A stretch of DNA of 64,000 bases from contig NW_026782173.1 of NCBI RefSeq assembly GCF_031769215.1, forward strand, positions 1,736,001 through 1,800,000, in the 5' to 3' direction. Made by a program: the position numbers and the translations under genes. This DNA is from Ylistrum balloti. Its lineage: Eukaryota. The notes beneath the pieces are model-generated. The model saw only the letters and a program-made list of their open reading frames with translations, was not told where the DNA came from and did not search any database. Shown one piece after another: positions 29,401 to 51,201 of this stretch (position 1 is its first letter; each line of letters opens with the position of its first letter).

Positions 29401-32400
29401 TACTAGTGTACTGATTAGAAGTATAGTGTCCTAGTGTACTAGTGTACTGATTAGAAGTATAGTGTACTAGTGTACTGATTAGAAGTATAGTGTACTAGTG
29501 TAATGATTAGAAGTATAGTGTACTAGTGTACTGATTAGATTTATAGTGTCCTAGTGTACTGATTAGAAGTATATAGTGTAGTATAGTGTATAGTACTGAT
29601 TAGAAGTATAGTGTATTAGTGTACTGATTAGAAGTATAGTGTATTAGTGTACTGATAAGAAGTATAGTGTATTAGTGTATAGTGTACTGATTAGAAGTAT
29701 AGTGTACTAGTGTACTGATTAGAAGTATAGTGTATTAGTGTACTGATAAGAAGTATAGTGTACTAGTGTACTGATTAGAAGTATAGTGTACTAGTGTACT
29801 GATTAGAAGTATAGTGTATTAGTGTACTGATTAGAAGTATAGTGTATTAGTGTACTGTACTGATTAGAAGTATAGTGTACTAGTGTACTGATTAGAAGTA
29901 TAGTGTATTAGTGTACTGATTAGAAGTATAGTGTACTAGTGTACTGATTAGAAGTATAGTGTATTAGTGTACTGATTAGAAGTATAGTGTATTAGTGTAC
30001 TAGTGTACTGATTAGAAGTATAGTGTACTAGTGTACTGATTAGAAGTATAGTGTATTAGTGTACTAGTGTACTGATTAGAAGTATAGTGTACTAGTGTAC
30101 TGATTAGAAGTATAGTGTATTAGTGTACTAGTGTACTGATTAGAAGTATAGTGTATTAGTGTACTGATTAGAAGTATAGTGTACTAGTGTACTGATTAGA
30201 AGTATAGTGTATTAGTGTACTAGTGTACTGATTAGAAGTATAGTGTACTAGTGTACTGATTAGAAGTATAGTGTACTAGTGTACTGATTAGAAGTATAGT
30301 GTACTAGTGTACTGATTAGAAGTATAGTGTATTAGTGTATTGATAAGAAGTATAGTGTATTAGTGTACTGATTAGAAGTATAGTGTATTAGTGTACTGAT
30401 TAGAAGTATAGTGTACTAGTGTACTAGTGTACTGATTAGAAGTATAGTGTATCAGTGTACTGATTAGAAGTATAGTGTACTAGTGTACTGATTAGAAGTA
30501 TAGTGTATTAGTGTACTAGTGTACTGATTAGAAGTATAGTGTACTAGTGTACTGATTAGAAGTATAGTGTACTAGTGTACTGATTAGAAGTAAAGTGTAC
30601 TAGTGTACTGATTAGAAGTATAGTGTATTAGTGTACTGATTAGAAGTATAGTGTACTAGTGTACTGATTAGAAGTATAGTGTATTAGTGTATTGATAAGA
30701 AGTATAGTGTATTAGTGTACTGAATGGAAGTATAGAAGTAAAGTGTATTAGGGTATTCAGTGTAAGGGTATTGATAGGAAGTATAATGTACTAATTGTTA
30801 TTATACTAAACAAATAAGATCTTATCACTTACTTAGAAGCTACAGAGTTAAACGAAGCTTTCCTTTCTTCCAGGGCTTCGTGTAGATTGGTGATTTTATC
30901 AGCTGAAGACCTGATCAATAAGAACAAGACGAATTAATTGGTTACTGATACATGTAATAAAGATCTTTCTCTTTTAATCTGAATCATGATTTCAACCTGA
31001 TTTTATCAGACAAAACAAAACTCAATTCCATTCATTTATATCATAAGTCAATAGTATCTACGTAGAATAGAATGTGCATGTTTCAGAAATTTCATTAACC
31101 TTATATTTTATAAATACACATATACACCTGTCTTTCCATGATTATTTAGTTATATTTGAAGCATTTGGCACTCATGAGTAAAATGCTTATATATGAGTAA
31201 CTATAATTGTTTTACAACAGTTTACCTTTTGGATCGGCGTAGCAGCTCTTCTTGTTTGTCTATAGTATCCATGAGGTCATTCATCTATGAGAATTGTAAG
31301 GTCAAAGGTAAAAAGTCAATCGAAAACTCAAACATTAAAACCACACATTTATTATGTTTTTATCAAATGAAGCTTTTCTATCAAATAATTCACTATCATT
31401 TGATCCAACATGAAAAACGAGGAGCAAAACAGAGGTCAAGTCAGCCTTACCAGGAAGTGTACAACACTTCTTACCACCTGTAATGTCTTGTCATGTTCCT
31501 ACCTGTAATGACTTGTCATGTTCCTACCTGTAATGACTTGTCATGTTCCTACCTGTAATGACTTGTCATATTTATACCTGTAATGACTTGTCGTGTTCCT
31601 ACCTGTAATGACTTGTCATGTTCCTACCTGTAATCCTACCTGTAATGACTTGTCATGTTCCTACCTGTAATGACTTGTCATATTTATACCTGTAATGACT
31701 TGTCGTGTTCCTACCTGTAATGACTTGTCGTGTTCCTACCTGTAATGACTTGTCATGTTCCTACCTGTAATGACTTGTCATATTTATACCTGTAATGACT
31801 TGTCATGTTCCTACCTGTAATGACATGTCATGTTCCTACCTGTAATGACTTGTCATGTTTATACCTGTAATGACTTGTCATGTTCCTACCTGTAATGACA
31901 TGTCATGTTACTACCTGTAATGACATGTCATGTTCCTACCTGTAATGACTTGTCATGTTCCTATCTGTAATGACATGTCATATTTATACCTGTAATGACA
32001 TGTCATGTTCCTACCTGTAATGACTTGTCATTTTCCTACCTGTAATGACATGTCATATTTATACCTGTAATGATATGTCATGTTCCTACCTGTAATGACT
32101 TGTCGTGTTCCTACCTGTAATGACTTGTTGTGTTCCTCCCTGTAATGACTTGTCGTGTTCCTACATGTAATGACTTGTCATGTTCCTACCTGTAATGACT
32201 TGTCATGTTCCTCCCTGTAATGACTTGTCATGTTCCTACCTGTAATGACTTGTCGTGTTCCTACCTGTAATGACTTGTCATGTTCCTCCCTGTAATGACT
32301 TGTCGTGTTCCTACCTGTAATGACTTGTCGTGTTCCTACCTGTAATGACTTGTCGTGTTCCTACCTGTAATGACTTGTCGTGTTCCTCCCTGTAATGACT

Positions 32401-35400
32401 TGTCGTGTTCCTACCTGTAATGACTTGTCGTGTTCCTACCTGTAATGACTTGTCATGTTCCATTTGTTTCATATGCTTGGACATCATTGTGATCTTTTTA
32501 CTGTATTCTCCTGTTACTAAAGCACGGTCCTCGTTCTGACTTATGGCTGTTTCTACAACACAATACACTTGAAATGAACAAATGAAAATGCATTCATTTT
32601 GAGCTCAACAATTAAACAAATATTGTGAGTGAGGTTGGAGTGGGCAAATAAAGTTAACCTGGCAATGGCAGCATCAAATTTTAAAATATTTCAAAAGTTT
32701 TTGAGCAAATTCCTCAAGCTGTAATGGATCACCACCATCGAGCTGTTAGTTATAGAATTGTCTATTCATATTTTCTATATTAATGAGCCCAAAATGGACC
32801 AACTTTACATTGTTCAGCAAATGTTAAATTAAATTTCATTACATATCACAGAGTTGCTCTGATGAAATGTATAATTTATAACTTAAAAGTTTTCTTAACC
32901 TGAAGATTCAAGTTCTTTTTTTTAAAAAGACAGAAAATGCTATTATTTAACCAGACACCTGTAGAAACATTTTTGTGATTTTGTGATTGATAACTAATAA
33001 ATCTTTCATTTAATTTTCTCATCTAAGAAAAAGTGCCTTTCCCTATATTATATATATTTGTTGTTTTTTGTGTTGATATCTATTATTATAGAAAACTGAA
33101 AACAATTTCTTATGTAATATAGTCCAGAATTTAACCTGTTTAACCATTTGTCTACATCTTGAGTGTAATGGCTTACCAATAGACTTTAAGATATCTACAG
33201 GGATGTTGTTGCCAGCTAGCTCCATTCTACACAGGGTTTTATTAGTTTGTAACATTTCTAGTAAAGCACGGCCTCCCAACAGCCCAACATTGTTCCATCG
33301 TAAGTCTGAAAAAATTAACTTGTACTTATAAATAAAGGTATAGAAACACGTTTGGATTGTTCATCCTATTCGAAAGAGCTGGTATTGTAATATTTTGCTT
33401 TTTGAAATAAAACTACTTTTTACTAAAACTGAATAATTTTAAAGAAAACCAAACAATCTTGTAATTTACATACAAATGTACTTTATACATCTATGGAAGA
33501 TATACTGATAAATAGTGAGATATAAAATTGTTTGATTATATACTATTGAAATAAACAATAATCTTATACACTAAATATATCAATTTCTGAGTAAATGTAA
33601 AACAAATTACAAACTGAACGGTAAGTACCAACTAATATTGTCCTTACCCAGAGATCTTAGCGTGCTGTTCCTCTTGAGCCCTGCAGCAAGCTCTATGGCT
33701 CCGTCATGATTGATCTGGTTGTTCCTGATGTCTAGAGCCTGGAGACTATCATTGGAACCTACTCCCTCACAAAACAGAGCAAAGGAGTTGTCCAGCATCC
33801 CCAAGGCATTCCATTCCAGACACAAGCTGTGTACAAAAATAATTGGACTAGTTTGACAATCCACCAGAAATAAGTAACAATACTGTATATCATTTCCACT
33901 AAACACTTAAGTTTTAAACTGTCTTACCAGTACCCAAAATATTTGTAAATACGAAAATGAAAGTCCTTGTTACCATCAGTTTTTTAAACAAATGATCCAG
34001 CATCACCATGTACCTTTTCTTGTTCTAAAATGTTTTGACAGTAATATTTAACTACAAAGTTATCATCATTAGTCTCTATCTTATATTGAGAAAAATAAAC
34101 TATTCTACTCAGTAAAGATGTAAGCTTTGTAGTATACCTAAGGAGGGTGTGGTTGTGACGCAGCATCTTTCCAAGGAAGTCCACACCTGTTCCACGGATG
34201 TTGTTTCCCTAGAAGATAAAAGTATTTACTAGTTGGATGTTCTCTTTGATACTTTTTCAAATCTCAATTTTATGAATTAATTAGTTTACTGAAATAAATA
34301 TTTCTGGATAACTGGGTATGCAAAATGAGATAATAAAATCACAATGGCAGATGGTATAAATGAAACCACAACACAGTATCTCTTTATACATTAGCAAAAA
34401 GGAACATTTGTGCTGATAACCAACTACTTTATCTATAGCATGTTTATATATCTTAGAATGAATAAGATCGTTTCTCAAAATTCCTGTCAGTTTTTAATTC
34501 ATTAATTAAAACACAAGAATGACCCTTTTGTGTCCATGCTTCTCCATTATCAGGATTAAGTAAAAATTTAAGTGGAGAGAAATTCAGCTAAACAGAAATT
34601 TTAAACTTTAAAACGGCTCAATTAATTAACAAAGTCAAAATAAATTTAAAGTGAATTTCTTAATTTTAATATGTGTTGGAGAAGTTATATACTGATATAA
34701 GTATCTATTATTCCATGTTTTGTTGACAGCGTTCAAGGTTTTCCATAATAGCCGGTCGCCAGTCAATTTGACCGGTTACTTTGATCATTTGGCCACCTAC
34801 ACCAATCCAGTTCCGTAATAATGTTCCGTACACGACTACATGTACACGGCAGGCCAGCCTCCTACTTTCACTACACAGCCTACTACTAACAAAATTATGG
34901 AAAACCCTGAGCATTTGTACTTAAGAGAGAAACTGAACTAACTGCAAAACTTATACAAACAACTTTATCAACAAGTGACATAATTTATTCATGATTTCAC
35001 AAAGTAATATCACAGGAGTTTCATACAATACTGATGTCATGACTATTACATGGCACAACTTACTTATGTGATAAAATCCTTTCTTTAGTCTCAGTCCTGG
35101 TAAGTACATATATAAATAAAAATCTCACCTTCATGTCAAGTTTTTTACAGTAGTTGTTTGTGGAAAATCCATAAGCTAATCCTTTTACACCTGTAAATTA
35201 AGATGATATCACATAAAACACTACTTCAATTGGTACTATATTACCTTGGTATTTCAAAATTTTCAATTTATTTTCAACATAACATTTGATGGTATTTTAT
35301 CAATATATGAGTATAATGTTTCATACCATCTTCACTAAGCATACAATCAGCAAACTTGATTTCTCTGAAATTTTTGTCTGTGGCAATTGTTTTCCCAAGG

Positions 35401-37327: not shown

Positions 37328-40094
37328 ATGGCAGCAGAGGCTGCTTTAGTGGCGAATCGTCTTCGAGAAGCACAAGAAAGCAATGTTATTGGTATACATT
37401 CCTTCATGTTTATGTTATAAGAAAGTAAAGTGGTATTTACTCTCAGTTTGATTTAAGACTGCATCTGTACCTACAGCACATGTCTTCTGTCTCTAATGTT
37501 ACTTCGGTTTAGTAGTAGTATTTGGGGACCGTCAGTTCTGATTATTAATCCCAAGGCAGTGATTAAATGGATAAGATATTTATGTACATTTCATTTAGAT
37601 AAAAAGAATTATGATTAGATAGGTAGGGTACAGTGACAAGTGATTTGAAGGTGTCAACAGCGAAACAAAAGATTACTGACGTGAGTTCTGTTGTGTGATA
37701 GTTTTTGGATAGAAGGCGTGTTTATAGCAGTCTGTAGATGATTTTATGTGTCTGAAAGTGTATGGGTTGTCGTGGCTTGAATTAGTGCCGATGTCGACAG
37801 GCAGGAGATTTTCAAGATGAAGTGCAGCAAGGCCATGTACTATTTTGAAGATTATAAGTCTGTTTTGCAAGAGGCACCTGTGAAGCAGAGATTCAGTCAT
37901 ATTGGTGACAGAGCTTTTATTGTGTTAATTGTTACACACGTATCTAGTGGCTCTGCAATGCACTTTCTCTATCTGGTTTATTTGGGATGTATTTTGACGA
38001 TCTCGAACTTTTGTGCTACATGTATATTCTAGCTTAGAACATACTAGAGTTTATCAGAATGGTCTTTCACATGTGAAGAGTTTATATTTAAATTTCATCA
38101 AAGGATGCAGAGTGATTGATTTGTTTAGATGTAATGGAGTTGATGTGCAGGTCCCATTTCAGAATAGGCTGTGCAGTGATCCCCAGATTTTTTGTAGATT
38201 TTTTTGTCTCTAGGACATGGCGATGTAAAGTGTCATTTGGAGGTGAAGATGATCATTTATTTGTGACTTCCAGTATGGAGCAATTGTCAGGATGAAGGGA
38301 CATAAGCCAATCTTATTCCCAGACAGCTGCAGTGTCACGGTCCAACTGAAATTTGTGAACGTCATCATTGGACTTGATGTCCCTGTATATAATAGTGTCA
38401 TCAGCAAAGAGAAAGATAATGCAATGTTTAATGTATTCAGAAAAATGGCTTAAGTCTAGTGTTTCAGTGGATGGCATCCTCAATACACCAAGGGTTACGA
38501 TCGCTTTCGCTCTCTGTACCCCTGGAACCATTTTCCATACACCAGGGGTTACAATCACAGGCTGATACACTCCTTTTGAAGATTACAGAGGAGGAACACC
38601 CAACTTCAAAGCCATAACAATATATGCTATGCGACCTGAAATTTGTTTGATGTACATCATAGGATCAACCCAGTCTTTTGGTGTTGTCCACAAGGTGTCG
38701 TACAGGAAACCTTCAATATTGCCATGAAATGTTCCAGGGGAACAGAGAGCGAAAGTGATTGTAACCCCTGGAATATTGAGGATGGTGGGACAGTGTATGC
38801 AGTTGTTCTGGAGAAAAAGAAGGATGTTTTTTGATAATATATGATACATTCTGTAAATATAATCAGAAATATGTGTAGATTTTTTTTTCTGTTGTAGATT
38901 TGACAAACTGTGGATTGATGAAAGTTCCAGATGCAATTTATATATTCCTGAAGCACACACCTGTGTTATCCTGTTCATTTTCAAAGAATCAATTAAAGCG
39001 AATTCCACCGCGGTTTCCAGTGACATTCAAAACAGTCCAAGGTGATTCCTATTAATGATAATAATAGAAAAGTGATGAAATGTCAGTAAACCTGAAATTC
39101 ACATGTTTTAAAAGCAGACAGTAGAGATGTTAGGGAGATTTATAAGAAGTTTTTGTTGGTGATATAGATTTTTGCAGATAGTACAGAGATACACATGTCC
39201 CTCAGTGTAATTTCAGATGAACTATATATGTAAGCAACTGCATCATTAAATGATTCATCACATCAATGCAGCTTTTGCATCTTTGAATACAATAAAGCTC
39301 TTGACCTCTTTTGTTTGAATTTGTGGAAATTGTTTTGCTCTCCATAATTTCAGTTGAGGATGGGAAAACTTATTGCGAAGCTCTTTTGTATTGATTTAAT
39401 GGTGTTCAAAAGACACTTTGAATAGTAAAAGCTTTAGAGCCTTTTTTCTTGAACACAGGAGGTATCCAATTCAAAATGTGTATTGAAATATGCTAATCAT
39501 TTGGTTGTCTATATACAAGTTTTACAGAAAGGTAATCTCTTTCAGGTATTACCGCTATCATTTTCCTTGGTATGTGAAAGCACAATATAAGACTCTGAAA
39601 GCACAAAAGACTATGATTTGACATACATGTGTACATAAATCTTGATTGCTTTTTCGCAGAGCTGAATATGAGTGATAACAAACTGTCAGAGCTGCCAGAA
39701 GAAATGAGTGAACTGATCGACCTAAAAACAATGGACATTTCCAGGAATCAGTTCACCTCATTACCAGATTTTGTGTATCAGTATTCAAACTTACTACAAC
39801 TGAAACTCCACTCCAATCAGATTTCAGGTATAGGATCAATTTACACGTAGTGTAAATAGGATGTACACAATTTCAATTGTATTTTGAACAAAACACTACA
39901 AAGCTTTCTAAAATTACTTCATTCATGAAATTGACATTTTTGTTGCAGATATTGACACTGAAAAACTGGTGCAAATGTCTTCCCTCCAAGAAGTCGATTT
40001 TCGAGGTAATCCACTGTCAGCAGAAGTGGTGTGTCGTCTGCAGGAGTCGAACATCACAGTACAATTGGACAAGCTAGGGGAGGGAGATTCCTGA
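37328..40094 (+). CDS. LRRC20: LRRC20-like leucine-rich repeat protein, paralogue a, 173 aa, 4 exons
   Basis: Exons 37328-37391, 38898-39041, 39660-39827, 39949-40094 (522 nt). AALVANRLREAQES..DLTNCGLMKVPDAIY..NQLK..ELNMSDNKLSELPEEM..DISRNQF..EKLVQMSSLQEVDFRGNPL is collinear with LRRC20 as recalled. Confidence 0.88.
37673..38460 (-). mobile_element. 5'-truncated, decayed LINE (CR1/L2-type) reverse transcriptase remnant in LRRC20a intron 1
   Basis: LFADDTIIYRDIKSNDDVHKFQLD (RT YADD-type motif) and RLIIFKIVHGL...FRHIKSSTDCYKHAFYPKTI (typical CR1/L2 ORF2 C-terminus); frameshifts and stops between them. Confidence 0.8.
38475..38784. mobile_element. ~310-bp MITE-like element with ~58-bp imperfect terminal inverted repeats
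   Basis: 38475-38534 (CATCCTCAATACACCAAGGGTTACGATCGCTTTCGCTCTCTGTACCCCTGGAACC) is inverted at 38727-38784. No clear TSD. Confidence 0.7.
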
Positions 40095-40779: not shown

Positions 40780-42167
40780 GGACAGATCGTTCACCGTGAT
40801 ACTGACGTATCAAAACTACCATTTGAGTGTACACCAGTGATGTTCCCCGGACAGACCACCGTGATACTGACGTATCAAAACTACCATTTGAGTGTACACC
40901 AGTGATGTTCCCCGGACAGACCACCGTGATACTGATGTATCAAAACTACCATTTGAGTGTACACCAGTGATGTTCCCCGGACAGATCACTCACCGTGATA
41001 CTGACGTATCAAAACTACCATATGAGTGTACACCAGTGATGTTCCCCGGACAGATCACTCACCGTGATACTGATGTATCAAAACTACCATTTGAGTGTAC
41101 ACCAGTGATGTTCCCCGGACAGATCACTCACCGTGATACTGATGTATCAAAACTACCATTTGAGTGTACACCAGTGATGTTCCCCGGACAGATCACTCAC
41201 CGTGATACTGACGTATCAAAACTACCATTTGAGTGTACACCAGTGATGTTCCCCGGACAGTTCACCGTGATACTGATGTATCAAAACTACCATTTGAGTG
41301 TACACCAGTGATGTTCCCCGGACAGATCACTCACCGTGATACTGACGTATCAAAACTACCATTTGAGTGTACACCAGTGATGTTCCCCGGACAGTTCACC
41401 GTGATACTGATGTATCAAAACTACCATTTGAGTGTACACCAGTGATGTTCCCCGGACAGTTCACCGTGATACTGATGTATCAAAACTACCATTTGAGTGT
41501 ACACCAGTGATGTTCCCCGGACAGTTCACCGTGATACTGATGTATCAAAACTACCATTTGAGTGTACACCAGTGATGTTCCCCGGACAGATCACTCACCG
41601 TGATACTGATGTATCAAAACTACCATTTGAGTGTACACCAGTGATGTTCCCCGGACAGATCACTCACCGTGATACTGATGTATCAAAACTACCATTTGAG
41701 TGTACACCAGTGATGTTCCCCGGACAGATCACTCACCGTGATACTGACGTATCAAAACTACCATATGAGTGTACACCAGTGATGTTCCCCGGACAGTTCA
41801 CCGTGATACCGATGTAACAAAACTACCATTTGAGTGTACACCAGTGATGTTCCCCGGAAAGATCACTCGCCGTGATACTGATGTATCAAAACTACCATTT
41901 GAGTGTACACCATCAATGTTCCCCGGACAGTTCACCGTGATACTGACGTATCAAAACTACCATTTGAGTGTACACCAGCAATGTTCCACGGACAGTTCAC
42001 CGTGATACCGATGTAACAAAACTACCATTTGAGTGTACACCAGTGATGTTCCCCGGAGAGATCACTCGCCGTGATACTGATGTATCAAAACTACCATTTG
42101 AGTGTACACCAGCAATGTTCCCCGGACAGTTCACCGTGATACTGACGTATCAAAACTACCATTTGCA
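40780..42167. repeat. 64-69-bp minisatellite (~21 copies) between the LRRC20 paralogues
   Basis: Unit GTGTACACCAGTGATGTTCCCCGGACAGATCACTCACCGTGATACTGATGTATCAAAACTACCATTTGA, with 4-5-bp deletion variants. Confidence 0.96.
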
Positions 42168-43024
42168 TTCACTGTTTTATTATTATACAATTGTACTTGG
42201 AAAGAATGTTCCGTAGAATGATGCATTATAAAACGAGTCTCATTAGTTTTTCTTTGACAAGTCATGTCCTTGGGACGGATTTCATAAAGTCTCGTTTAAT
42301 TTACAACAGTTACATTATGACTTACACGTTTTAAAGTAAAAATGTGGAAGACAAAATCTAAAGGAGGCAGCCATTCTGTTGCGTCGTTTTCAACTCGTGA
42401 CGTTATGTCGTTGTCCATGTTATAAACATCATTATCTTTTTCTGACTTATGTAACACAGGAAAAGCACTCTAGGGCACATTACTCAAGTAACATACGCAA
42501 AAATATTACATGTGTGCATCCACCAGATTATGTGATTGAAAGGAGCTGGCTGGCCGTCATGATATAAGACGCGTGGTGTGATGTTTGCCTGTAAAGCTCG
42601 GCCAGTTATAACGACCGTAAATTCCACAACAAGACAGTTTCTTGCTTACACATTCCCTACGCATGTTGCTATCATTTACCGACACTAATTTGATTTTAAC
42701 TTAAGAAAAAACTGCTAATGTTATCCGTCAAGTAGAAATGCCCATTTGACGGTGAGCCGTCACCGCTGCCGAGTCAATAATGATGATGCTGTTATGGTCA
42801 TGTGATTTTTTTATCGTACTGTACATCACATCTCTTTCTGGTTAGATGAGCAAAAACATGGCCGGGAATAGATCGTTGTGATCAAGCATTTCAGAACATC
42901 TTTTCTGAAATCACTTAAGAGTATTTATTGCTACATACCAAAAGTCCACGCGAATGGGTCCGTACGGCATCATGGTAACCACAGTAACGGACTAAAATTA
43001 TGAGCTATTAATAGACAAGACGTT

Positions 43025-46000
43025 ATGGCGACGGAGGTAGAGAGGAAGGCAGCAGCAGAAGTTGCCGAAGTTGCTAGACGTCTACAAGAAGCAAAGGAAA
43101 GTTGTATTCTAGGTAAGATTTACATCTGTAATACACGCCATTTTAACAGCCAGTATTCTCTAGAATATGATTTATTTGTACATAATGCAATTGTGTATTA
43201 CAAAACCTTTGATAAGTTATAAGTGTAGATATATATATAGAAACAGATAAGATACACGTGCTGTGCATACACCGACAACCAGCACACACGTACTTATCTG
43301 TTGTAGTCGACTGACTGATGTTAATGCGTTAGTCTAAGTGTATAAGCACAGTATTAAACAAGTACTTAAATGTGACAAGTAGAAATCATAATAGGTAATT
43401 ATCTTTATGAGAATTGACAAATGTAACTATATCAAACCCTTGTAAGAGATTTCTGTGTAACCGGACACTACTCGAAAGTAGTATTTTTTATGCTATAATA
43501 CATTACCAATATATACTCTGATCAGCACGGAGAGTGTTCCAGTGTTGGCTACCACACCTGCCAAAACCCCTCAATTCTTTTAAAATGCTCTCGATATATA
43601 CAAACACATGCCTCTTATCTTAAGGCACACGAATGCTAAATGCATGTGTTGTTCAGTTATGGAAAATTACTAATATTACGTTAATGGATATTAAAGTGAC
43701 ATTTTCGGTAACCTCACATATATAAGATAACTATTCTTCTATATACTACATGTATGTATCAGATTATATAGACATAGCAAGATGTGTTTATGAAACAGTA
43801 CTGTGCCTCGGTTACAACAAAAATCTGAAATTGGACATTAAAATTGTATTGTGTAAGGCATGTGCTAATTGCATGCACGTTTTGTGAAACACTTATGTCC
43901 TCATTGTGGTAATGGTTGCTTGTTCCATTTTGGTACCATCAGAAAGGTCTTGTCAAAGGAAACACACATACCTAATATGAAAGCCCTACCTCCTTAAATA
44001 CGATAGTTATGGCCAAAGTCAAAATTTGTCAAATGTAGGTTAAAGGTCACGGTCAAGGTCACATGGTGAACAATTTGGGTACCAGCGGAAAGGTCTTTTA
44101 CAAGGAGTACACATGCCAATTATGAAAGCCTTACCTCTTACAGTGCAAAAGTTATGGGCAAGATTAAAGTTTACAACACACAAAGAGAGAGCACAAAAAC
44201 AATATGCCCCGACCCTTCGACCCGTGGGCATTAAAAGCATTATTAATAGACAAATAAATGTGTTTATTATAGATAAATCAACAAACTGATAAATTCGTGA
44301 GAAATGTTATCACTCCCCAAACCTAATACCATTGTAGACCTCTCTGACTGTGGTCCGTAGTGGATGTTCCTGACGTAAATATCTGCCATTGTAGACTGAC
44401 TGTGGTCTGTAGTGGATGTTTCTGATGTAGCTATCTACCATTGTAGACCTCTCTGACTGTGGTCTGTAGTGGATGTTCCTGGCATAGCTATCTACCATTG
44501 TAGACTAACTGTGGTCTGTAGTGGATCTTCCTGACATAGCTATCTACCATTGTAGACCTATATGACTGTGGTCTGTAGTGGATGTTTCTGACATAGCTAT
44601 CTACCATTGTAGACCTCTCTGACTGGTCTGTAGCGGATGTTTCTTATATACCTATCTACCATTGTAGACCTCTCTGACTGTGGTCTGTAGCGGATGTTTC
44701 TGATGTAGCTATCTACCATTGTAGACCTCTCTGACTGTGGTCTGTAGTGGATGTTCCTGACATAGCTGTCTACCATTGTAGAACTCTCTGACTGTGGTCT
44801 ATAGCGGATGTTTCTGATGTAGCTATCTGCCATTGTAGACCTCTCTGACTGTGGTCTGGTTCTGTAGCGGATGTTCCTGACGTAGCTATCTACCACTGTA
44901 GACCTCTCTGACTGTGGTCTGGTTCTGTAGCGGATGTTCCTGACGTAGCTATCTGCCATTGTAGACCTCTCTGACTGTGGTCTGGTCTGTAGCGGATGTT
45001 CCTGACATAGCTATCTACCATTGTAGACCTCTCTGACTGGTCTGTCGCGGATGTTTCTTATATAGCTATCTACCATTGTAGACCTCTCTGACTGTGGTCT
45101 GTAGTGGATGTTCCTGACATAGCTGTCTACCATTGTAGAACTCTCTGACTGTGGTCTGTAGCGGATGTTTCTGATGTAGCTATCTACCATTGTAGACCTC
45201 TCTGACTGGTCTGTAGTGGATGTTCCTGACGTAGCTATCTACCATTGTAGACCTGTCTGACTGTGGTCTGTAGCGGATGTTTCTGATGTAGCTATCTACC
45301 ATTGTAGACCTCTCTGACTGTGGTCTGTAGTGGATGTTCCTGACATAGCTGTCTACCATTGTAGACCTCTCTGACTGTGGTCTGTAGTGGATGTTTCTGA
45401 CATAGCTATCTACCATTGTAGACCTCTCTGACTGTGGTCTGTAGCGGATGTTCCTGACGTAGCTATCTACCATTGTAGACCTCTCTGACTGTGGTCTGTA
45501 GTGGATGTTTCTTATATAGCTATCTACCATTGTAGACCTCTCTGACTGGTATGTAGCGGATGTTCCTGACATAGCTATCTACCATTGTAGACCTCTCTGA
45601 CTGTGGTCTGTAGCGGATGTTTCTGATGTAGCTATCTACCATTGTAGACCTCTCTGACTGGTCTGTAGTGGATGTTCCTGACATAGCTATCTACCATTGT
45701 AGACCTCTCTGACTTTGGTCTGTAGCGGATGTTTCTGATGTAGCTATCTGCCATTGTAGACCTCTCTGACTGTGGTCTGGTCTGTAGCGGATGTTCCTGA
45801 CGTAGCTATCTACCACTGTAGACCTCTCTGACTGTGGTCTGTAGTGTATCTTCCTGACATAGCTATCTACCATTGTAGACCTCTCTGACTGGTATGTAGT
45901 GGATGTATCTGACATATAGCTATCTTCCATTGTAGACCTCTCTGACTGGTCTGTAGTGGATGTTCCTGACATATATCTATCTACCATTGTAGAACTCTGT

Positions 46001-49000
46001 GACTGTGGTCTGTAGCGGATATTTCTGACATAGCTATCTACCATTGCAGACCTCTATAACTGTGGTCTGTAACGGATGTTTCTTATGTAGCTATCTACCA
46101 TTGTAGACCTCTCTGACTGTGGTCTGTAGTGGATGTTTCTGACATAGCTTTCTACCATTGTAGACCTCTCTGACTGATCTGTAGTGGATGTTTCTGATGT
46201 AGCTATCTACCATTGTAGACCTCTCTGACTGGTCTATAGTGGATGTTTCTTATGTAGCTATCTACCATTGTAGACCTCTCTGACTGTGGTCTGTAGTGGA
46301 TGTTTCTGACGTAGCTCTCTACCATTGTAGACCTGTCTGACTGGTCTGTAGTCTATGTTTCTGACGTAGCTATCTACCATTGTAGACCTCTCTGACTGTG
46401 GTCTGTAGCGGATGTTTTCTGACATAGCTATCTACCATTGTAGACCTCTCTGACTGTGGTCTGTAGCGGATGTTCCTGACGTAGCTATCTACCATTGTAG
46501 ACCTCTCTGACTGTGGTCTGTAGTGGATGTTCCTGACGTAGCTATCTACCATTGTAGACCTCTCTGACTGTGGTCTGTAGTGGATGTTCCTGACGTAGCT
46601 ATCTACCATTGTAGACCTCTCTGACTGTGGTCTGTAGTGGATGTTCCTGACGTAGCTATCTACCATTGTAGACCTCTCTGACTGTGGTCTGTAGCGGATG
46701 TTTCTGATGTAGCTATCTACCATTGTAGACCTCTCTGACTGTGGTCTGTAGTGGATGTTTCTGACGTAGCTATCTACCATTGTAGACCTCTCTGACTGGT
46801 CTGTAGCGGATGTAGACCTCTCTGACTGTGGTCTGTAGCGGATGTTTCTGATGTAGCTATCTGCCATTGTAGACCTCTCTGACTGTGGTCTGTAGCGGAT
46901 GTTTCTGATGTAGCTATCTACCATTGTAGACCTCTCTGACTGTGGTCTGTAGCGGATGTTTCTGATGTAGCTATCTACCATTGTAGACCTCTCTGACTGG
47001 TATGTAGCGGATGTTCCAGACATAGCTATCTACCTTTGTAGATCTCTCTGACTGTGGTCTGTAGCGGATGTTTCTGATGTAGCTATCTGCCATTGTAGAC
47101 CTCTCTGACTTGTATGTAGCGGATGTTCCTGACATAGCTATCTACCATTGTAGACCTCTCTGACTGTGGTCTGTAGCGGATGTTTCTGATGTAGCTATCT
47201 ACCATTGTAGACCTCTCTGACTGGTCTGTATTGGATGTTCCTGACATAGCTATCTACCACTGTAGACCTCTCTGACTGTGGTCTGTAGCGGATGTTTCTG
47301 ACATAGCTATCTACCATTGTAGACCTCTCTGACTGTGGTCTGTAGCGGATGTTTCTGATGTAGCTATCTACCATTGTAGACCTCTCTGACTGTGGTCTGT
47401 AGTGGATGTTCCTGACATAGCTATCTACCATTGTAGACTGACTGTGGTCTGTAGTGTATCTTCCTGACATAGCTATCTACCATTGTAGACCTCTCTGACT
47501 GTGGTCTGTAACGGATGTTCCTGACGTAGCTATCTACCATTGTAGACCTCTCTGACTGTGGTCTGTAGTGGATGTTTCTGACATAGCTAGCTACCATTGT
47601 AGACCTCTCTGACTGTGGTCTGTAGCGGATGTTTCTGATGTAGCTATCTGCCATTGTAGACCTCTCTGACTGTGGTCTGTAGTGGATGTTTCTGACGTAG
47701 CTCTCTACCATTGTAGACCTCTCTGGCTGTGGTCTGATGAAGATACCTGATGCCATTTATATGGTTTTGAGAGGAACAACTATAAGGACAAGCAACTTAT
47801 CACGGAATCAGTTACAGAAAGTTCCACCAAAGTTACCGGCCAACTTCAAGCTGCTTCAAGGTATATCTTTATAACATTATATATGTATGGAGCAAGTTAA
47901 CAACTCCATGGTAAACTCACATACTGTTGCGTTAGTGTACAGTGTGTCTGTCAACAGCTTCAAGATATATCCTTATAACATCACACATATATACAACATG
48001 ACAACTGCTCCAATGTATATCCTTATAACATCACACACATATACAGCGTGTCATCTGTTCCAATGTTTATCCTTATAACATCACAAACATATACAGCGTG
48101 TCAGCTGTTCAAAGATATATCCTTATAACATCACACACATATACAGCGTGTCAACTGTTCCAAGATATATCCTTATAACATCACACACACATACAGCGTG
48201 TCAACTGTTCCAAGATATATCCTTATAACATCACACACATATACAGCGTGTCAACTGTTCCAAGATATATCCTTATAACATCACACACATATACAGCGTG
48301 TCAACTGTTCCAATGTATATCCTTATAACATCACACACATATACAGCGTGTCAACTGTTCCAAGATATATCCTTATAAAATCACAAACATATACAGCGTG
48401 TCAACTGTTCCGATGTATATCCTTATAACATCACACACATATACAGCGTGTCACCTGTTCCAATGTATATCCTTATAACATCACACACATATACAGCGTG
48501 TCAACTGTTCCAAGATATATCCTTATAACATCACACACATATACAGCGTGTCAACTGTTGCAATGTATATCCTTATAACATCACACACATATACAGCGTG
48601 TCAAGTGTTCCAAGATATATCCCTATAACATCACACACATATACAGCGTGTCAACTGTTCCAAGATATATTCTTATAACATCACACACATATACAGCGTG
48701 TCAATTGTTCCAATGTATATCCTTATAACATCACACACATATACAGCGTGTCAACTGTTCCAAGATATATTCTTATAACATCACACACATATACAGCGTG
48801 TCAACTGTTCCAAGAAATATCCTTATAACATCACACACATATACAGCGTGTCAACTGTTCCAAGATATATCCTTATAACATCACACACATATACAGCGTG
48901 TCAACTGTTCCAAGATATATCCTTATAACATCACACACATATACAGCGTGTCAACTGTTCCAATGTATATCCTTATAACATCACACACATATACAGCGTG

Positions 49001-50572
49001 TCAACTGTTCCAATGTATATCCTTATAACATCACACACATATACAGCGTGTCAACTGTTCCAAGAATATCATTATAACATCACACACATATAAAGCGTGA
49101 CAACTGTTCCAAGATATATCCTTATAACATCACACACATATACAGCGTGTCAACTGTTCCAAGATATATCCTTATAACATCACACACATATACAGCGTGT
49201 CAACTGTTGCAATGTATATCCTTATAACATCACACACATGTACAGCGTGACAACTGTTCCAAGATATCCTTATAAAAACACACACATATACAGCGTGACA
49301 ACTGCACCTTGATATGTCCTTATAATATCACACACATATACAGCGTGACAACTGCACCTTGATATATCCTTATAACATCACACACATATACAGCGTGATA
49401 ACTGTTCCAAGATGTATCCTTATAACATCACACACCTATACAGCGTGTCAACTGTTCCAATGTTTAACCCCATATCACGGAGGTATAAATTACACACTGG
49501 TACAACAAATATTACAGAACAACTTGTCTACTACTTGTTTTGTGGAAATAACTAAAGTAATATGACTTGGTTAATGTCGTATACAATTGAGAGGCTCCGA
49601 GACTTCAATAATTTAAATTTTTATATTGATATCGGTTCTTCATGACTACATTTGAACGTAAATAGAAAGACTTTCGTTTGTTCATCACACATCTTGCACT
49701 TGCTTTTACTGTATTTACAAGTAGGCAGAATTTAGCAGTTTAAATATGTTTTGGATAAGTGTATTGCCGTAATTTTAAAACTCCAGAAAGGTATGCAAGT
49801 TTCTAGACTGAGATGTTTATATATATGTTGTTCTGGAGATGTATACTTTTTACACTGTGCACAACTTGTAACATATTCACCATAGTATATCATGCAATTT
49901 GTTTCAGAACTTAATCTGAGTCAAAACTTCCTATCTGAGTTACCAGGAGAAATGAGTTTGATGTCGGAACTGACTGCTTTGGACTTGTCAATGAATCGTC
50001 TCCGTGAAATACCACCAGTAATCTATCAGTTCGGTAACCTACAGGTGTTGAGGATAACCAGGAATGCAATTGTTGGTAATGTCAAATTTCCAACTCTTTG
50101 ATGTTGATTTGTTACTAATAAAGTAAAAAACAAAACACCCACGTACTTTAAATAACACATATACTCAGGTAATATCTTAAACCTTTGTTATTTACACTTA
50201 AATATTTTATTCTTTTATCATGTATTATCTTGAATCAGAGTCACAAACAATTATTAATATTATGTTTTTTGTAAATTTATTTTATTTTTATTTAGCAAAT
50301 AAATGTATTTTTTATGAAGTGATTCTGATGTTCTTGAGGATCCGATCTCTTTACCGATATCTGAAAAAGACTTTTATTTAAGAGAAGCAAATTTATTTCT
50401 ATTTCTTTCTTCAGAAATTGATATGGATAGGCTAAGTCAGATGTCCTCTCTACAGGAAGTGGATCTTCGCGGTAATCCTCTGTCACCGGAAGTAAAGAGC
50501 AATCTTCTCGAGAGAAGATTTCGTGTGCTCATTGATGACGTCGAAGAGGAAGAAAGTATGAGTGTGGATTAA
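43025..50572 (+). CDS. LRRC20: LRRC20-like leucine-rich repeat protein, paralogue b, 185 aa, 4 exons
   Basis: Exons 43025-43112, 47717-47860, 49908-50075, 50415-50572 (558 nt). Same intron positions and internal exon sizes (144, 168 nt) as paralogue a; EVAEVARRLQEAKES..DLSGCGLMKIPDAIY..ELNLSQNFLSELPGEM..LQEVDLRGNPL. Confidence 0.88.
43777..44236 (+). mobile_element. Non-autonomous Helentron/HINE-like element
   Basis: Starts CAAGATGTGTTTATGAAACA; two ~146-bp subunits (GGTACC...GAAAGGTCTT...ATATGAAAGCC at 43932 and 44078); ends AAAAACAATATGCCCC...GGGCATTAAAA with a subterminal hairpin (TGCCC 44205 / GGGCA 44226). Family from recall of bivalve repeats. Confidence 0.65.
44325..47740 (+). repeat. 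57-bp minisatellite (~60 copies) made of the LRRC20b exon 2 acceptor plus exon start
   Basis: Unit CTATCTACCATTGTAG|ACCTCTCTGACTGTGGTCTGTAGTGGATGTTTCTGACATAG; the last copy is the true acceptor (47716|47717). Confidence 0.97.
47945..49465 (+). repeat. 50-bp minisatellite (~30 copies) derived from the LRRC20b exon 2 donor junction
   Basis: Unit TCAACTGTTCCAAGATATATCCTTATAACATCACACACATATACAGCGTG versus junction CAAGCTGCTTCAAG|GTATATCTTTATAACATTATATATGTATG. Confidence 0.95.
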
Positions 50573-51201
50573 ATCCTGATTCATACGTGTCATAATGAAG
50601 AAGAAAAAGAACACGCGCCAAGATTCGTCGGTTGTTACTAAGTTAAAGGCTTAATGTTTACTTTTTGATACACCATACAATTCCTAAATGTGATAATAAA
50701 ATCATGCTTATTTGTATAAGGTTTTATTTCATTAGGGTAATCTATGTCGCTGAAATATTGATAAACAGAACATTGAATTCCATACGCCAATCAATATCCG
50801 TATGCAGTATTTTCATTGTTTACATCAGTATGTTAGATGTAAACACAATGGTATGAAAGGCGTTATATTCAATGATACTCTCTATTGTGAAATGAAATGT
50901 CCGCATTTTATTGGAACACAATCATTGTAATACAATTCCATATTTTCCTGTCGATATGCATTCTTGGAATTTATGTGGACAGTTTCAAACTTGTTGTGAA
51001 TAGCGACAACCCTGCCGATCATTAACATTTAAGTGTGTTTGTACCGTTTTAATGTTTATATTTATATACTTGTCTGTGATGTTTGTGTATGATGGCAATG
51101 TTTACGTATTTCTCTTACCTTCCATTGTTTCATTACTCCATTGGAACAGATATAAATGCGTTGTAACCATTGCTGTTTTGTTGATACATTTCTGCTTGTG
51201 A

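What the first reader, a model, noticed from the sequence alone, without database searches (positions are those of the whole stretch)
44325..47740. ~60 copies of the LRRC20b exon 2 acceptor, each leading straight into an in-frame stop
Seen: unit = 16 nt of acceptor plus the first 20 nt of exon 2. Upstream copies read TAG|AC CTC TCT GAC TGT GGT CTG TAG (D-L-S-D-C-G-L-stop in the exon 1 frame); only the last reads ...GGC TGT GGT CTG ATG AAG and continues the protein. That copy also has the more pyrimidine-rich CTCTCTACC, which I noticed only once elsewhere (~46315). Paralogue a has the same exon start (DLTNCGLM), so the exon is ancestral and the array derived. Inference: the spliceosome must bypass 3.4 kb of near-identical AGs; any upstream use is a built-in poison event, so copy number could act as an NMD-coupled expression rheostat, or the locus is a natural test of exon definition.
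Basis: partly seen in the sequence, partly recalled or inferred. Interest (0 to 1): 0.85.

Follow-up and report, generated by a model that had tools for sequence, protein, structure and literature searches.

The report
Splice-acceptor minisatellite in scallop LRRC20 intron
Intron 1 of a saucer-scallop LRRC20-like gene carries about 60 tandem copies of its own 3' splice site plus the first 20 bases of exon 2; this is a real and large example of an already described repeat type ("mirage" minisatellite), and nothing here shows that it regulates the gene.

Summary
A 57-bp minisatellite (44327-47736, 3.4 kb, 74% of intron 1) holds 59 upstream copies of the exon 2 acceptor of LRRC20-like paralogue b of Ylistrum balloti, plus one truncated copy. 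All 59 keep the AG. Joined to the exon 1 donor, all reach an in-frame stop within 1-26 codons; 31 read exactly DLSDCGL-stop.

The true acceptor at 47717 gives an intact 185-aa protein identical to NCBI's model. The gene is under purifying selection (dN/dS 0.14-0.27). The array is lineage-specific: the same intron is 369 bp in Argopecten, 556 bp in Mizuhopecten, and holds an unrelated array in Pecten.

About 36% of the window is minisatellite. Exon 2 is also followed by a 50-bp array copied from its donor. Such junction-derived arrays are known: amphioxus "mirages", reported to splice normally, and the human F7 intron 7 repeat. This scan has already logged at least eight like it elsewhere in this genome.

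The NMD-rheostat idea has no support and could not be tested, because no transcript data were reachable. Verdict: a tolerated by-product of a repeat-prone genome and a new member of a known kind.

The parts
43025..43112 (+). LRRC20-like paralogue b, exon 1 (ATG at 43025; ends in phase 1; donor TAG|GTAAGA)
   Evidence: the spliced model equals P0146
43113..47716 (+). Intron 1 of paralogue b, 4604 bp, against 369 bp in Argopecten and 556 bp in Mizuhopecten
44327..47736 (+). 57-bp minisatellite: 59 upstream copies of the 37-nt intron end plus 20 nt of exon 2. Each copy has a CTGAY branch-point-like motif about 22 nt upstream of TAG|AC. The last unit is the true junction
46807..46835 (+). Truncated extra copy (GGATGTAG|ACCTCTCTG...) that keeps the AG but lacks the branch motif and pyrimidine tract
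47717..47860 (+). Exon 2 of paralogue b (144 nt; true acceptor AG at 47715-47716; donor AAG|GTATAT)
47949..49460 (+). 50-bp minisatellite in intron 2, copied from the exon 2 end plus its donor; about 30 units by TRF. The 27 anchored copies read AAG|AT, AAT|GT or AAG|AA, never AAG|GT
49908..50075 (+). Exon 3 of paralogue b
50415..50572 (+). Exon 4 of paralogue b, with stop TAA at 50570-50572
37328..40094 (+). Paralogue a (exons 37328-37391, 38898-39041, 39660-39827, 39949-40094). It is 173 aa and equals P0123. It has no array in its introns and a strong pyrimidine tract at exon 2

Best explanation
This is a 'mirage' minisatellite. In the Ylistrum lineage, after it split from the other sequenced scallops, a 57-bp segment spanning the intron 1/exon 2 junction of LRRC20-like paralogue b was duplicated in tandem. 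The segment comprised 37 nt of intron end, with branch-point motif, weak pyrimidine tract and TAG, plus 20 nt of exon. Slippage or unequal exchange then amplified it to about 60 units, as happened to many other sequences in this very repeat-prone genome. Only the last unit is continuous with the rest of exon 2, so it remains the working acceptor. The 59 upstream units are complete-looking but most likely silent 3' splice-site copies. I infer they stay silent for three reasons. The unit has no usable 5' splice site, so no pseudo-exon can be defined. All but the last few copies lie more than about 300 nt from the exon 2 donor. The true site alone has the real exon body downstream (ATGAAGATACC..., purine-rich) and a slightly better pyrimidine tract (C instead of A at -14). 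Occasional use of the nearest copies would give a transcript with a premature stop, probably removed by NMD. That would be a small cost, not a designed control. Shown here: the structure, its origin from the junction, its lineage specificity, the intact constrained gene, and the stops. Inferred: silence in splicing and neutrality.
For: Array and copies. Stops. The true acceptor gives a protein identical to the NCBI model P0146. The tandem a and b paralogues occur in all four scallops; intron 1 of b is 369 bp in Argopecten and 556 bp in Mizuhopecten with no junction copies, and Pecten has an unrelated 23-bp array. The intron part of the unit aligns with the end of the Pecten intron at the orthologous place (P about 0.02). 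The copies keep GAC at exon position +10, as in Pecten and Argopecten, while the true exon now has GGC. Purifying selection on b is like that on its orthologues (dN/dS 0.14-0.27). Variation looks neutral: 20 of 57 positions are invariant and the hypervariable sites are CpG. No GT in the unit matches CAG|GTAAGT better than 5 of 9. About 14 minisatellites cover about 36% of the window, including a donor-derived array on the other side of the same exon. Published mirages at 3' and 5' junctions splice normally (PMC3087553; PMC3902484). Human F7 pseudo-donors stay silent (PMC1557585).
Against: No transcript data for this species could be reached; the P0146 cluster has a single genomic contig. Silence of the copies is therefore inferred, not shown. 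The last 3-5 copies lie within ordinary exon-definition range (exon lengths 201-430 nt) and differ from the true site by only two bases up to +20. Their non-use is not explained by any signal I could measure. Predicted RNA accessibility does not separate true from copy. Splice-critical positions are, if anything, slightly less variable than average (all six have at most one variant, against 61% of positions; P about 0.05, counts not independent). The donor-side array has lost every intact AAG|GT in two different ways. That suggests selection does act on such copies, so complete neutrality is not assured.
Confidence: 0.8

Rival explanations
1. The upstream acceptors are used at a meaningful rate. 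Each use yields a stop-containing transcript destroyed by NMD, so array length tunes LRRC20b output as a heritable rheostat.
For: Every copy keeps a branch-like motif, tract and AG, and every one leads to a stop upstream of two further exon junctions. The true acceptor is intrinsically weak: Y fraction 0.65 and longest Y run 6. Upstream copies are transcribed first.
Against: The array is absent from three other scallops, so the gene works without it. There is no clear selective signature on the copies. Distant copies have no downstream donor within reach, so adding copies far upstream should matter little. Experimental work on amphioxus mirages and on F7 found the copies silent (PMC3087553, PMC3902484, PMC1557585). 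The same repeat type is scattered over unrelated genes in this genome, which argues for a mutational rather than a gene-specific origin.
Confidence: 0.1
2. Paralogue b is silenced or decaying in Ylistrum, because its exon 2 is boxed in by two junction-derived arrays. The array would then be junk in a dying gene.
For: Both introns flanking exon 2 are swollen by arrays. No transcript evidence could be retrieved. A second paralogue (a) lies 3 kb upstream and could cover the function.
Against: The 185-aa ORF is intact with canonical splice sites. dN/dS against three orthologues is 0.14-0.27, no higher than between the other species. NCBI annotates the same model.
Confidence: 0.05
3. Assembly artefact: the array, or its copy number, was produced by mis-assembly of a shorter repeat.
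For: Long minisatellites are error-prone in assemblies. Amphioxus authors reported one mis-assembled mirage (PMC3087553).
Against: The units carry a rich, non-periodic mosaic of variants: 11 haplotypes at four sites, and 52-, 55-, 62- and 63-bp length variants. The contig is 3 Mb. A dozen other arrays of similar size lie in the same window. The copy number may be inexact, but the structure is real.
Confidence: 0.04

Closest known systems
Amphioxus 'mirage' minisatellites (Adh3, globin BflGb6/BflGb9, troponin C, PGBD5), as described in PMC3087553 and PMC3902484
   Same: Both are tandem repeats whose unit spans an exon-intron boundary, with the authentic junction as the terminal unit. BflGb6 duplicates the 3' end of an intron plus the 5' part of exon 2, exactly as here. 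The copies keep AG/GT signals, and edge units are excluded from homogenisation.
   Different: This array is in a mollusc, not a cephalochordate. It has about 60 copies of 57 bp, against 3-6 copies of 150-160 bp in BflGb6. Normal splicing and length polymorphism were shown experimentally in amphioxus but not here. Here the same exon carries such arrays on both sides.
Human F7 intron 7 37-bp VNTR (PMC1557585)
   Same: It is a minisatellite whose first unit spans the exon 7/intron 7 boundary, so the true splice site is followed by identical pseudo-sites that stay silent. In both cases the exon-proximal site is the one used.
   Different: F7 involves the donor side and few copies. Its pseudo-sites are identical to the true one and were shown to be functional when the true one is removed. 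Here the acceptor side is involved and nothing has been tested.
Regulated unproductive splicing (poison exons or alternative sites coupled to NMD, as in SR-protein genes; from general knowledge)
   Same: An alternative splice choice would insert a premature stop upstream of later exon junctions.
   Different: Those elements are conserved across species, are used at measurable rates and sit in feedback loops of RNA-binding proteins. This array is lineage-specific, has no known usage, and lies in a small LRR protein gene.
Other junction-derived arrays of this same genome logged by this scan (for example the USP5 acceptor array, s1-240620)
   Same: The species, the repeat type and the scale are the same: about 60 copies of a 3' splice site plus about 18-20 nt of exon.
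   Different: The gene differs. Here the copies give stops rather than in-frame insertions, and the exon is flanked by arrays on both sides. I did not re-examine those loci.

Membership tests
Mirage minisatellite (junction-spanning tandem repeat) | Head-to-tail tandem array of minisatellite-size units | tested here: met
   57-bp period, about 60 copies, 89-90% matches
Mirage minisatellite (junction-spanning tandem repeat) | The unit contains both intron and exon sequence, including the splice signal | tested here: met
   37 nt of intron end plus 20 nt of exon 2. The exon part is conserved in four species and in paralogue a. The intron part aligns to the Pecten intron end
Mirage minisatellite (junction-spanning tandem repeat) | The array is contiguous with the authentic junction, which forms its terminal unit | tested here: met
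   The last unit runs into exon 2 at 47717, and the array ends at exon position +20
Mirage minisatellite (junction-spanning tandem repeat) | Regular splicing is not disturbed | not testable with these tools
   No transcript data were reachable. Indirect support only: the NCBI model equals the true-acceptor model and the gene is under constraint
Mirage minisatellite (junction-spanning tandem repeat) | Length instability or polymorphism | not testable with these tools
   Only one assembly holds the locus. Internal mosaicism and local blocks of identical units suggest ongoing exchange
NMD-coupled regulated unproductive splicing | The alternative site introduces a premature stop upstream of a later exon junction | tested here: met
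   59 of 59 upstream AGs give a stop within 26 codons, and two exon junctions lie downstream
NMD-coupled regulated unproductive splicing | The alternative site is actually used | not testable with these tools
   No RNA data for Y. balloti in the collections
NMD-coupled regulated unproductive splicing | The element is conserved across related species | tested here: not met
   No junction copies in intron 1 of b in Argopecten, Mizuhopecten or Pecten
LRRC20 family (the host gene) | Small LRR protein, about 170-190 aa, homologous over its full length to annotated LRRC20 | tested here: met
   b is identical to P0146. It is 71% identical to the Argopecten protein and is in the family of the 'LRRC20-like' Mizuhopecten protein. 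It is 36-46% identical to further LRRC20-family representatives (organisms not named); insect LRRC20 proteins match the Pecten query at 38-47%.

The most novel reading that the evidence does not exclude
The nearest upstream copies are used at a measurable rate, so each allele's array length and unit variants set how much LRRC20b pre-mRNA is diverted to NMD. The contrast between 59 of 59 intact acceptor copies and the twice-crippled donor copies on the other side of the same exon would then reflect different selective regimes on decoy 3' and 5' splice sites.
Probability: 0.1. Interest if true: 0.6.

Novelty: new member of a known kind. Interest (0 to 1): 0.3.

Why it matters
Taken alone it is a curiosity. 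It is a very large acceptor-side example of a repeat type first described in amphioxus, now seen in a mollusc. Its value is as material for experiments. One exon has about 60 near-identical complete 3' splice-site modules upstream and about 30 crippled copies of its donor downstream. Related species lack both arrays. This makes a ready-made natural construct for asking how the spliceosome picks the exon-proximal site among identical competitors, the 3' counterpart of the human F7 experiments. It also bears on how far selection polices decoy donors compared with decoy acceptors. The frequency of such arrays in this genome is the more interesting question, and the scan has already raised it elsewhere.

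Tried and rejected
1. I tested whether the second half of the unit derives from exon positions 21-45. The alignment is not better than shuffles (1381 of 5000 reach the score), so I rejected this in favour of an intron origin.

2. I tested whether RNA structure hides the copies but not the true site. In isolation the copy forms a 12-bp hairpin (-14.3 kcal/mol, against -8.4 for the true junction). In a ±100-nt context, however, AG, tract and branch accessibility of the true site fall inside the range of the copies. There is no discrimination.

3. I looked for selection keeping or removing the AG. 20 of 57 positions are invariant, so nothing can be concluded.

4. I checked for a coding or RNA gene hidden in the array. 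Minus-strand ORFs of 91-217 aa are simply an open frame of the repeat broken by indels. Rfam gives no hit in 42000-51000.

5. I checked for dispersed copies of the unit as a sign of a transposon. There are none outside the array in the window. The rest of the genome could not be searched.

6. I looked for transcript evidence. The clusters of P0146 and P0123 hold one genomic contig each, so I did not spend look-ups on the 36-aa truncated product.

7. The original mirage paper (PMC117041) is not held. I relied on two papers that describe it.

8. The full spliced protein was never typed into a tool. Homologues were reached through the exon 2 reference and the stored protein ids instead.
Full report
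**What is there**

The window comes from the saucer scallop Ylistrum balloti. The protein assembled from exons 37328-37391, 38898-39041, 39660-39827 and 39949-40094 equals P0123, 'LRRC20-like [Ylistrum balloti]'. The protein assembled from 43025-43112, 47717-47860, 49908-50075 and 50415-50572 is identical to P0146, a second 'LRRC20-like [Ylistrum balloti]' of 185 aa on the same 3-Mb contig.

**The array**

- Tandem Repeats Finder reports a 57-bp array from 44327 to 47736, in two rows of 43.7 and 16.4 copies with 89-90% matches.
- Anchoring on CCATTGTAG|A finds 60 sites, all with AG. Fifty-nine are upstream copies and the last is the true acceptor. A truncated sixty-first copy lies near 46811.
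- Joining exon 1, which ends in phase 1, to each upstream AG gives an in-frame stop in 59 of 59 cases. Thirty-one read exactly DLSDCGL-stop. The 55-bp variants run 21 codons, and the longest runs 26.
- The junction 29-mer occurs 44 times at up to 3 mismatches, only inside the array, against none in shuffles.

**Anatomy of the unit**

The consensus unit, starting at the exon-like +1, is given. Its last 37 nt are the intron end. They carry a CTGAC or CTGAT motif whose A lies about 22 nt upstream of the AG; this fits the metazoan yUnAy branch consensus (general knowledge). A weak pyrimidine tract and TTGTAG follow. Its first 20 nt are exon 2. Each unit is thus a complete-looking 3' splice-site module, not just '16 nt of acceptor'.

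The intron part is ancestral sequence. At the orthologous position Pecten maximus reads TCCTGATGTAACGTTCTATTGTTGTAG, against TTCTGACGTAGCTCTCTACCATTGTAG here. The part upstream of the shared TTGTAG aligns better than 98% of shuffles or background windows. An alternative idea, that the second half of the unit came from exon positions 21-45, is not supported.

The in-frame TAG is simply the first three bases of the intron segment placed after exon position +20 by the duplication. The unit is 19 codons long, so the frame is kept from unit to unit.

**True site compared with the copies**

Up to +20 the true junction differs from the consensus copy at two bases.

- At -14 it has C instead of A, which gives a run of six pyrimidines instead of three.
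- At +10 it has G instead of A (GGC Gly against GAC Asp). Pecten and Argopecten have GAC there, so the copies probably preserve the older exon state.

After +20 the true exon continues ATGAAGATACC..., while the copies continue TAGYGGATG.... This acceptor is weak in all four scallops (Y fraction 0.53-0.65), unlike paralogue a (0.82).

No GT inside the unit matches CAG|GTAAGT at more than 5 of 9 positions. The array therefore offers no pseudo-exons. Use of copy k would only lengthen exon 2 by 57k nt up to the donor at 47861. Predicted RNA accessibility does not separate the true site from the copies.

**Age and origin**

The a-b gene pair exists in Argopecten irradians, Mizuhopecten yessoensis and Pecten maximus.

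| Species | Intron 1 of b | Junction copies |
|---|---|---|
| Y. balloti | 4604 bp | 59 upstream copies |
| A. irradians | 369 bp | none |
| M. yessoensis | 556 bp | none |
| P. maximus | about 2.47 kb | none; an unrelated 23-bp x 78 array |

The array therefore arose in the Ylistrum lineage. The true junction differs from the consensus unit by 2 of 57 bases, while synonymous divergence from the other genera is about 0.75. The array is much younger than the genera.

Units form a well-mixed mosaic: 11 haplotypes at four sites, and about 88% identity at every lag, with a faint two-unit periodicity. Three of the four hypervariable sites are CpG positions (CG to TG or CA). I read that as methylation-driven decay within a gene body.

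**State of the gene**

The ORF is intact and all splice sites are canonical. dN/dS of Y. balloti b against its orthologues is 0.14-0.27, the same range as pairs that do not involve Y. balloti (0.18-0.30). The gene has evidently kept working with the array in place.

**Context**

The window holds about 14 minisatellite arrays covering roughly 36% of its bases. Immediately after exon 2, a 50-bp array (47949-49460) is copied from the exon end plus its donor. Its 27 anchored copies read AAG|AT (16), AAT|GT (10) or AAG|AA (1), never the intact AAG|GT. The remaining GT's tally is the true donor at 47861.

Earlier notes of this scan report many such junction-derived arrays in unrelated genes of this genome (USP5, TDRD5, BAG6, FAM221A and others). 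They pointed me to the term 'mirage'. I checked that lead in the literature.

- PMC3087553 describes tandem repeats spanning exon-intron boundaries in amphioxus Adh3 and globin genes. One (BflGb6) duplicates the 3' end of an intron plus the 5' part of exon 2. RT-PCR indicated regular splicing despite retained AG/GT signals.
- PMC3902484 says the same for troponin C and PGBD5.
- PMC1557585 shows that the identical pseudo-donors of the human F7 intron 7 VNTR are functional but silent, and that the exon-proximal site is chosen.

I found no paper describing these arrays in scallops.

**Interpretation**

The best-supported reading is a neutral or nearly neutral by-product of a genome that makes minisatellites readily. 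A 57-bp tandem duplication happened to straddle the junction and then expanded. The last unit remained the working acceptor because it alone is joined to the exon body.

Why the nearest few copies are not preferred is not explained by anything I could compute. I infer a combination of exon-body enhancers after +20, the slightly better tract, and the fact that any upstream 'exon' would contain further 3' splice-site modules.

Against it stand the lineage specificity, the absence of a clear selective signature (20 of 57 unit positions are invariant, so the invariant AG means little), the published behaviour of comparable arrays, and the mutational, genome-wide nature of the phenomenon. The twice-independent crippling of the donor copies hints that selection does police some decoys. 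That is the most interesting loose end.

**Limits**

No RNA data for this species were reachable. The rest of the genome could not be searched for the unit. The copy number rests on one assembly.

Noticed in passing
window 47842-49460: The 50-bp array after exon 2b is copied from the exon end plus its donor. Copies read AAG|AT (16), AAT|GT (10, besides the true donor) or AAG|AA (1), never AAG|GT. These are two different disabling changes, in contrast to the 59 of 59 intact acceptor copies upstream of the same exon.
   Followed up: partly
L002 4185-4291 (Mizuhopecten yessoensis, intron 1 of paralogue a): A 40-bp x 2.7 repeat reads tgtag|ACTGTGCTCTGTTGAAGTTT. It resembles the start of exon 2 (2-3 mismatches to a 16-mer) and lies about 120 bp upstream of the true exon. 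It may be an independent small junction-derived repeat at the homologous junction. blastn-short does not report it, so it is only suggestive.
   Followed up: partly
L003 7394-7484 and 8024-9776 (Pecten maximus): Exon 1 of the b orthologue matches in two different frames, through either a frameshift or an assembly error. This is probably why NCBI starts its model (P0148, 141 aa) at a Met in exon 2. The same intron holds an unrelated 23-bp x 78 minisatellite.
   Followed up: partly
window 44327-47736: In each copy the acceptor lies in a 12-bp inverted repeat, CCATTGTAGACC / GGTCTGTAGTGG (-14.3 kcal/mol in isolation). Hairpin potential of this kind might have favoured slippage. Three of the four hypervariable unit positions are CpG sites.
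   Followed up: partly
window 1-64000: About 14 minisatellite arrays (periods 21-69 bp, 15-126 copies) cover about 36% of the window. Eight of the 14 periods are multiples of three (binomial P about 0.06). The orthologous regions of Argopecten and Mizuhopecten have almost none outside a coding acidic repeat.
   Followed up: partly
window 31476-32461: A 25-bp x about 33-39 array has a unit containing CCT|GTAATG. I did not examine it.
   Followed up: no
window 43900-44150: The unique part of intron 1 contains two similar segments of about 65 nt (ggtacca.c.gaaaggtctt...atgaaagcc.tacctc), probably fragments of a dispersed element.
   Followed up: no
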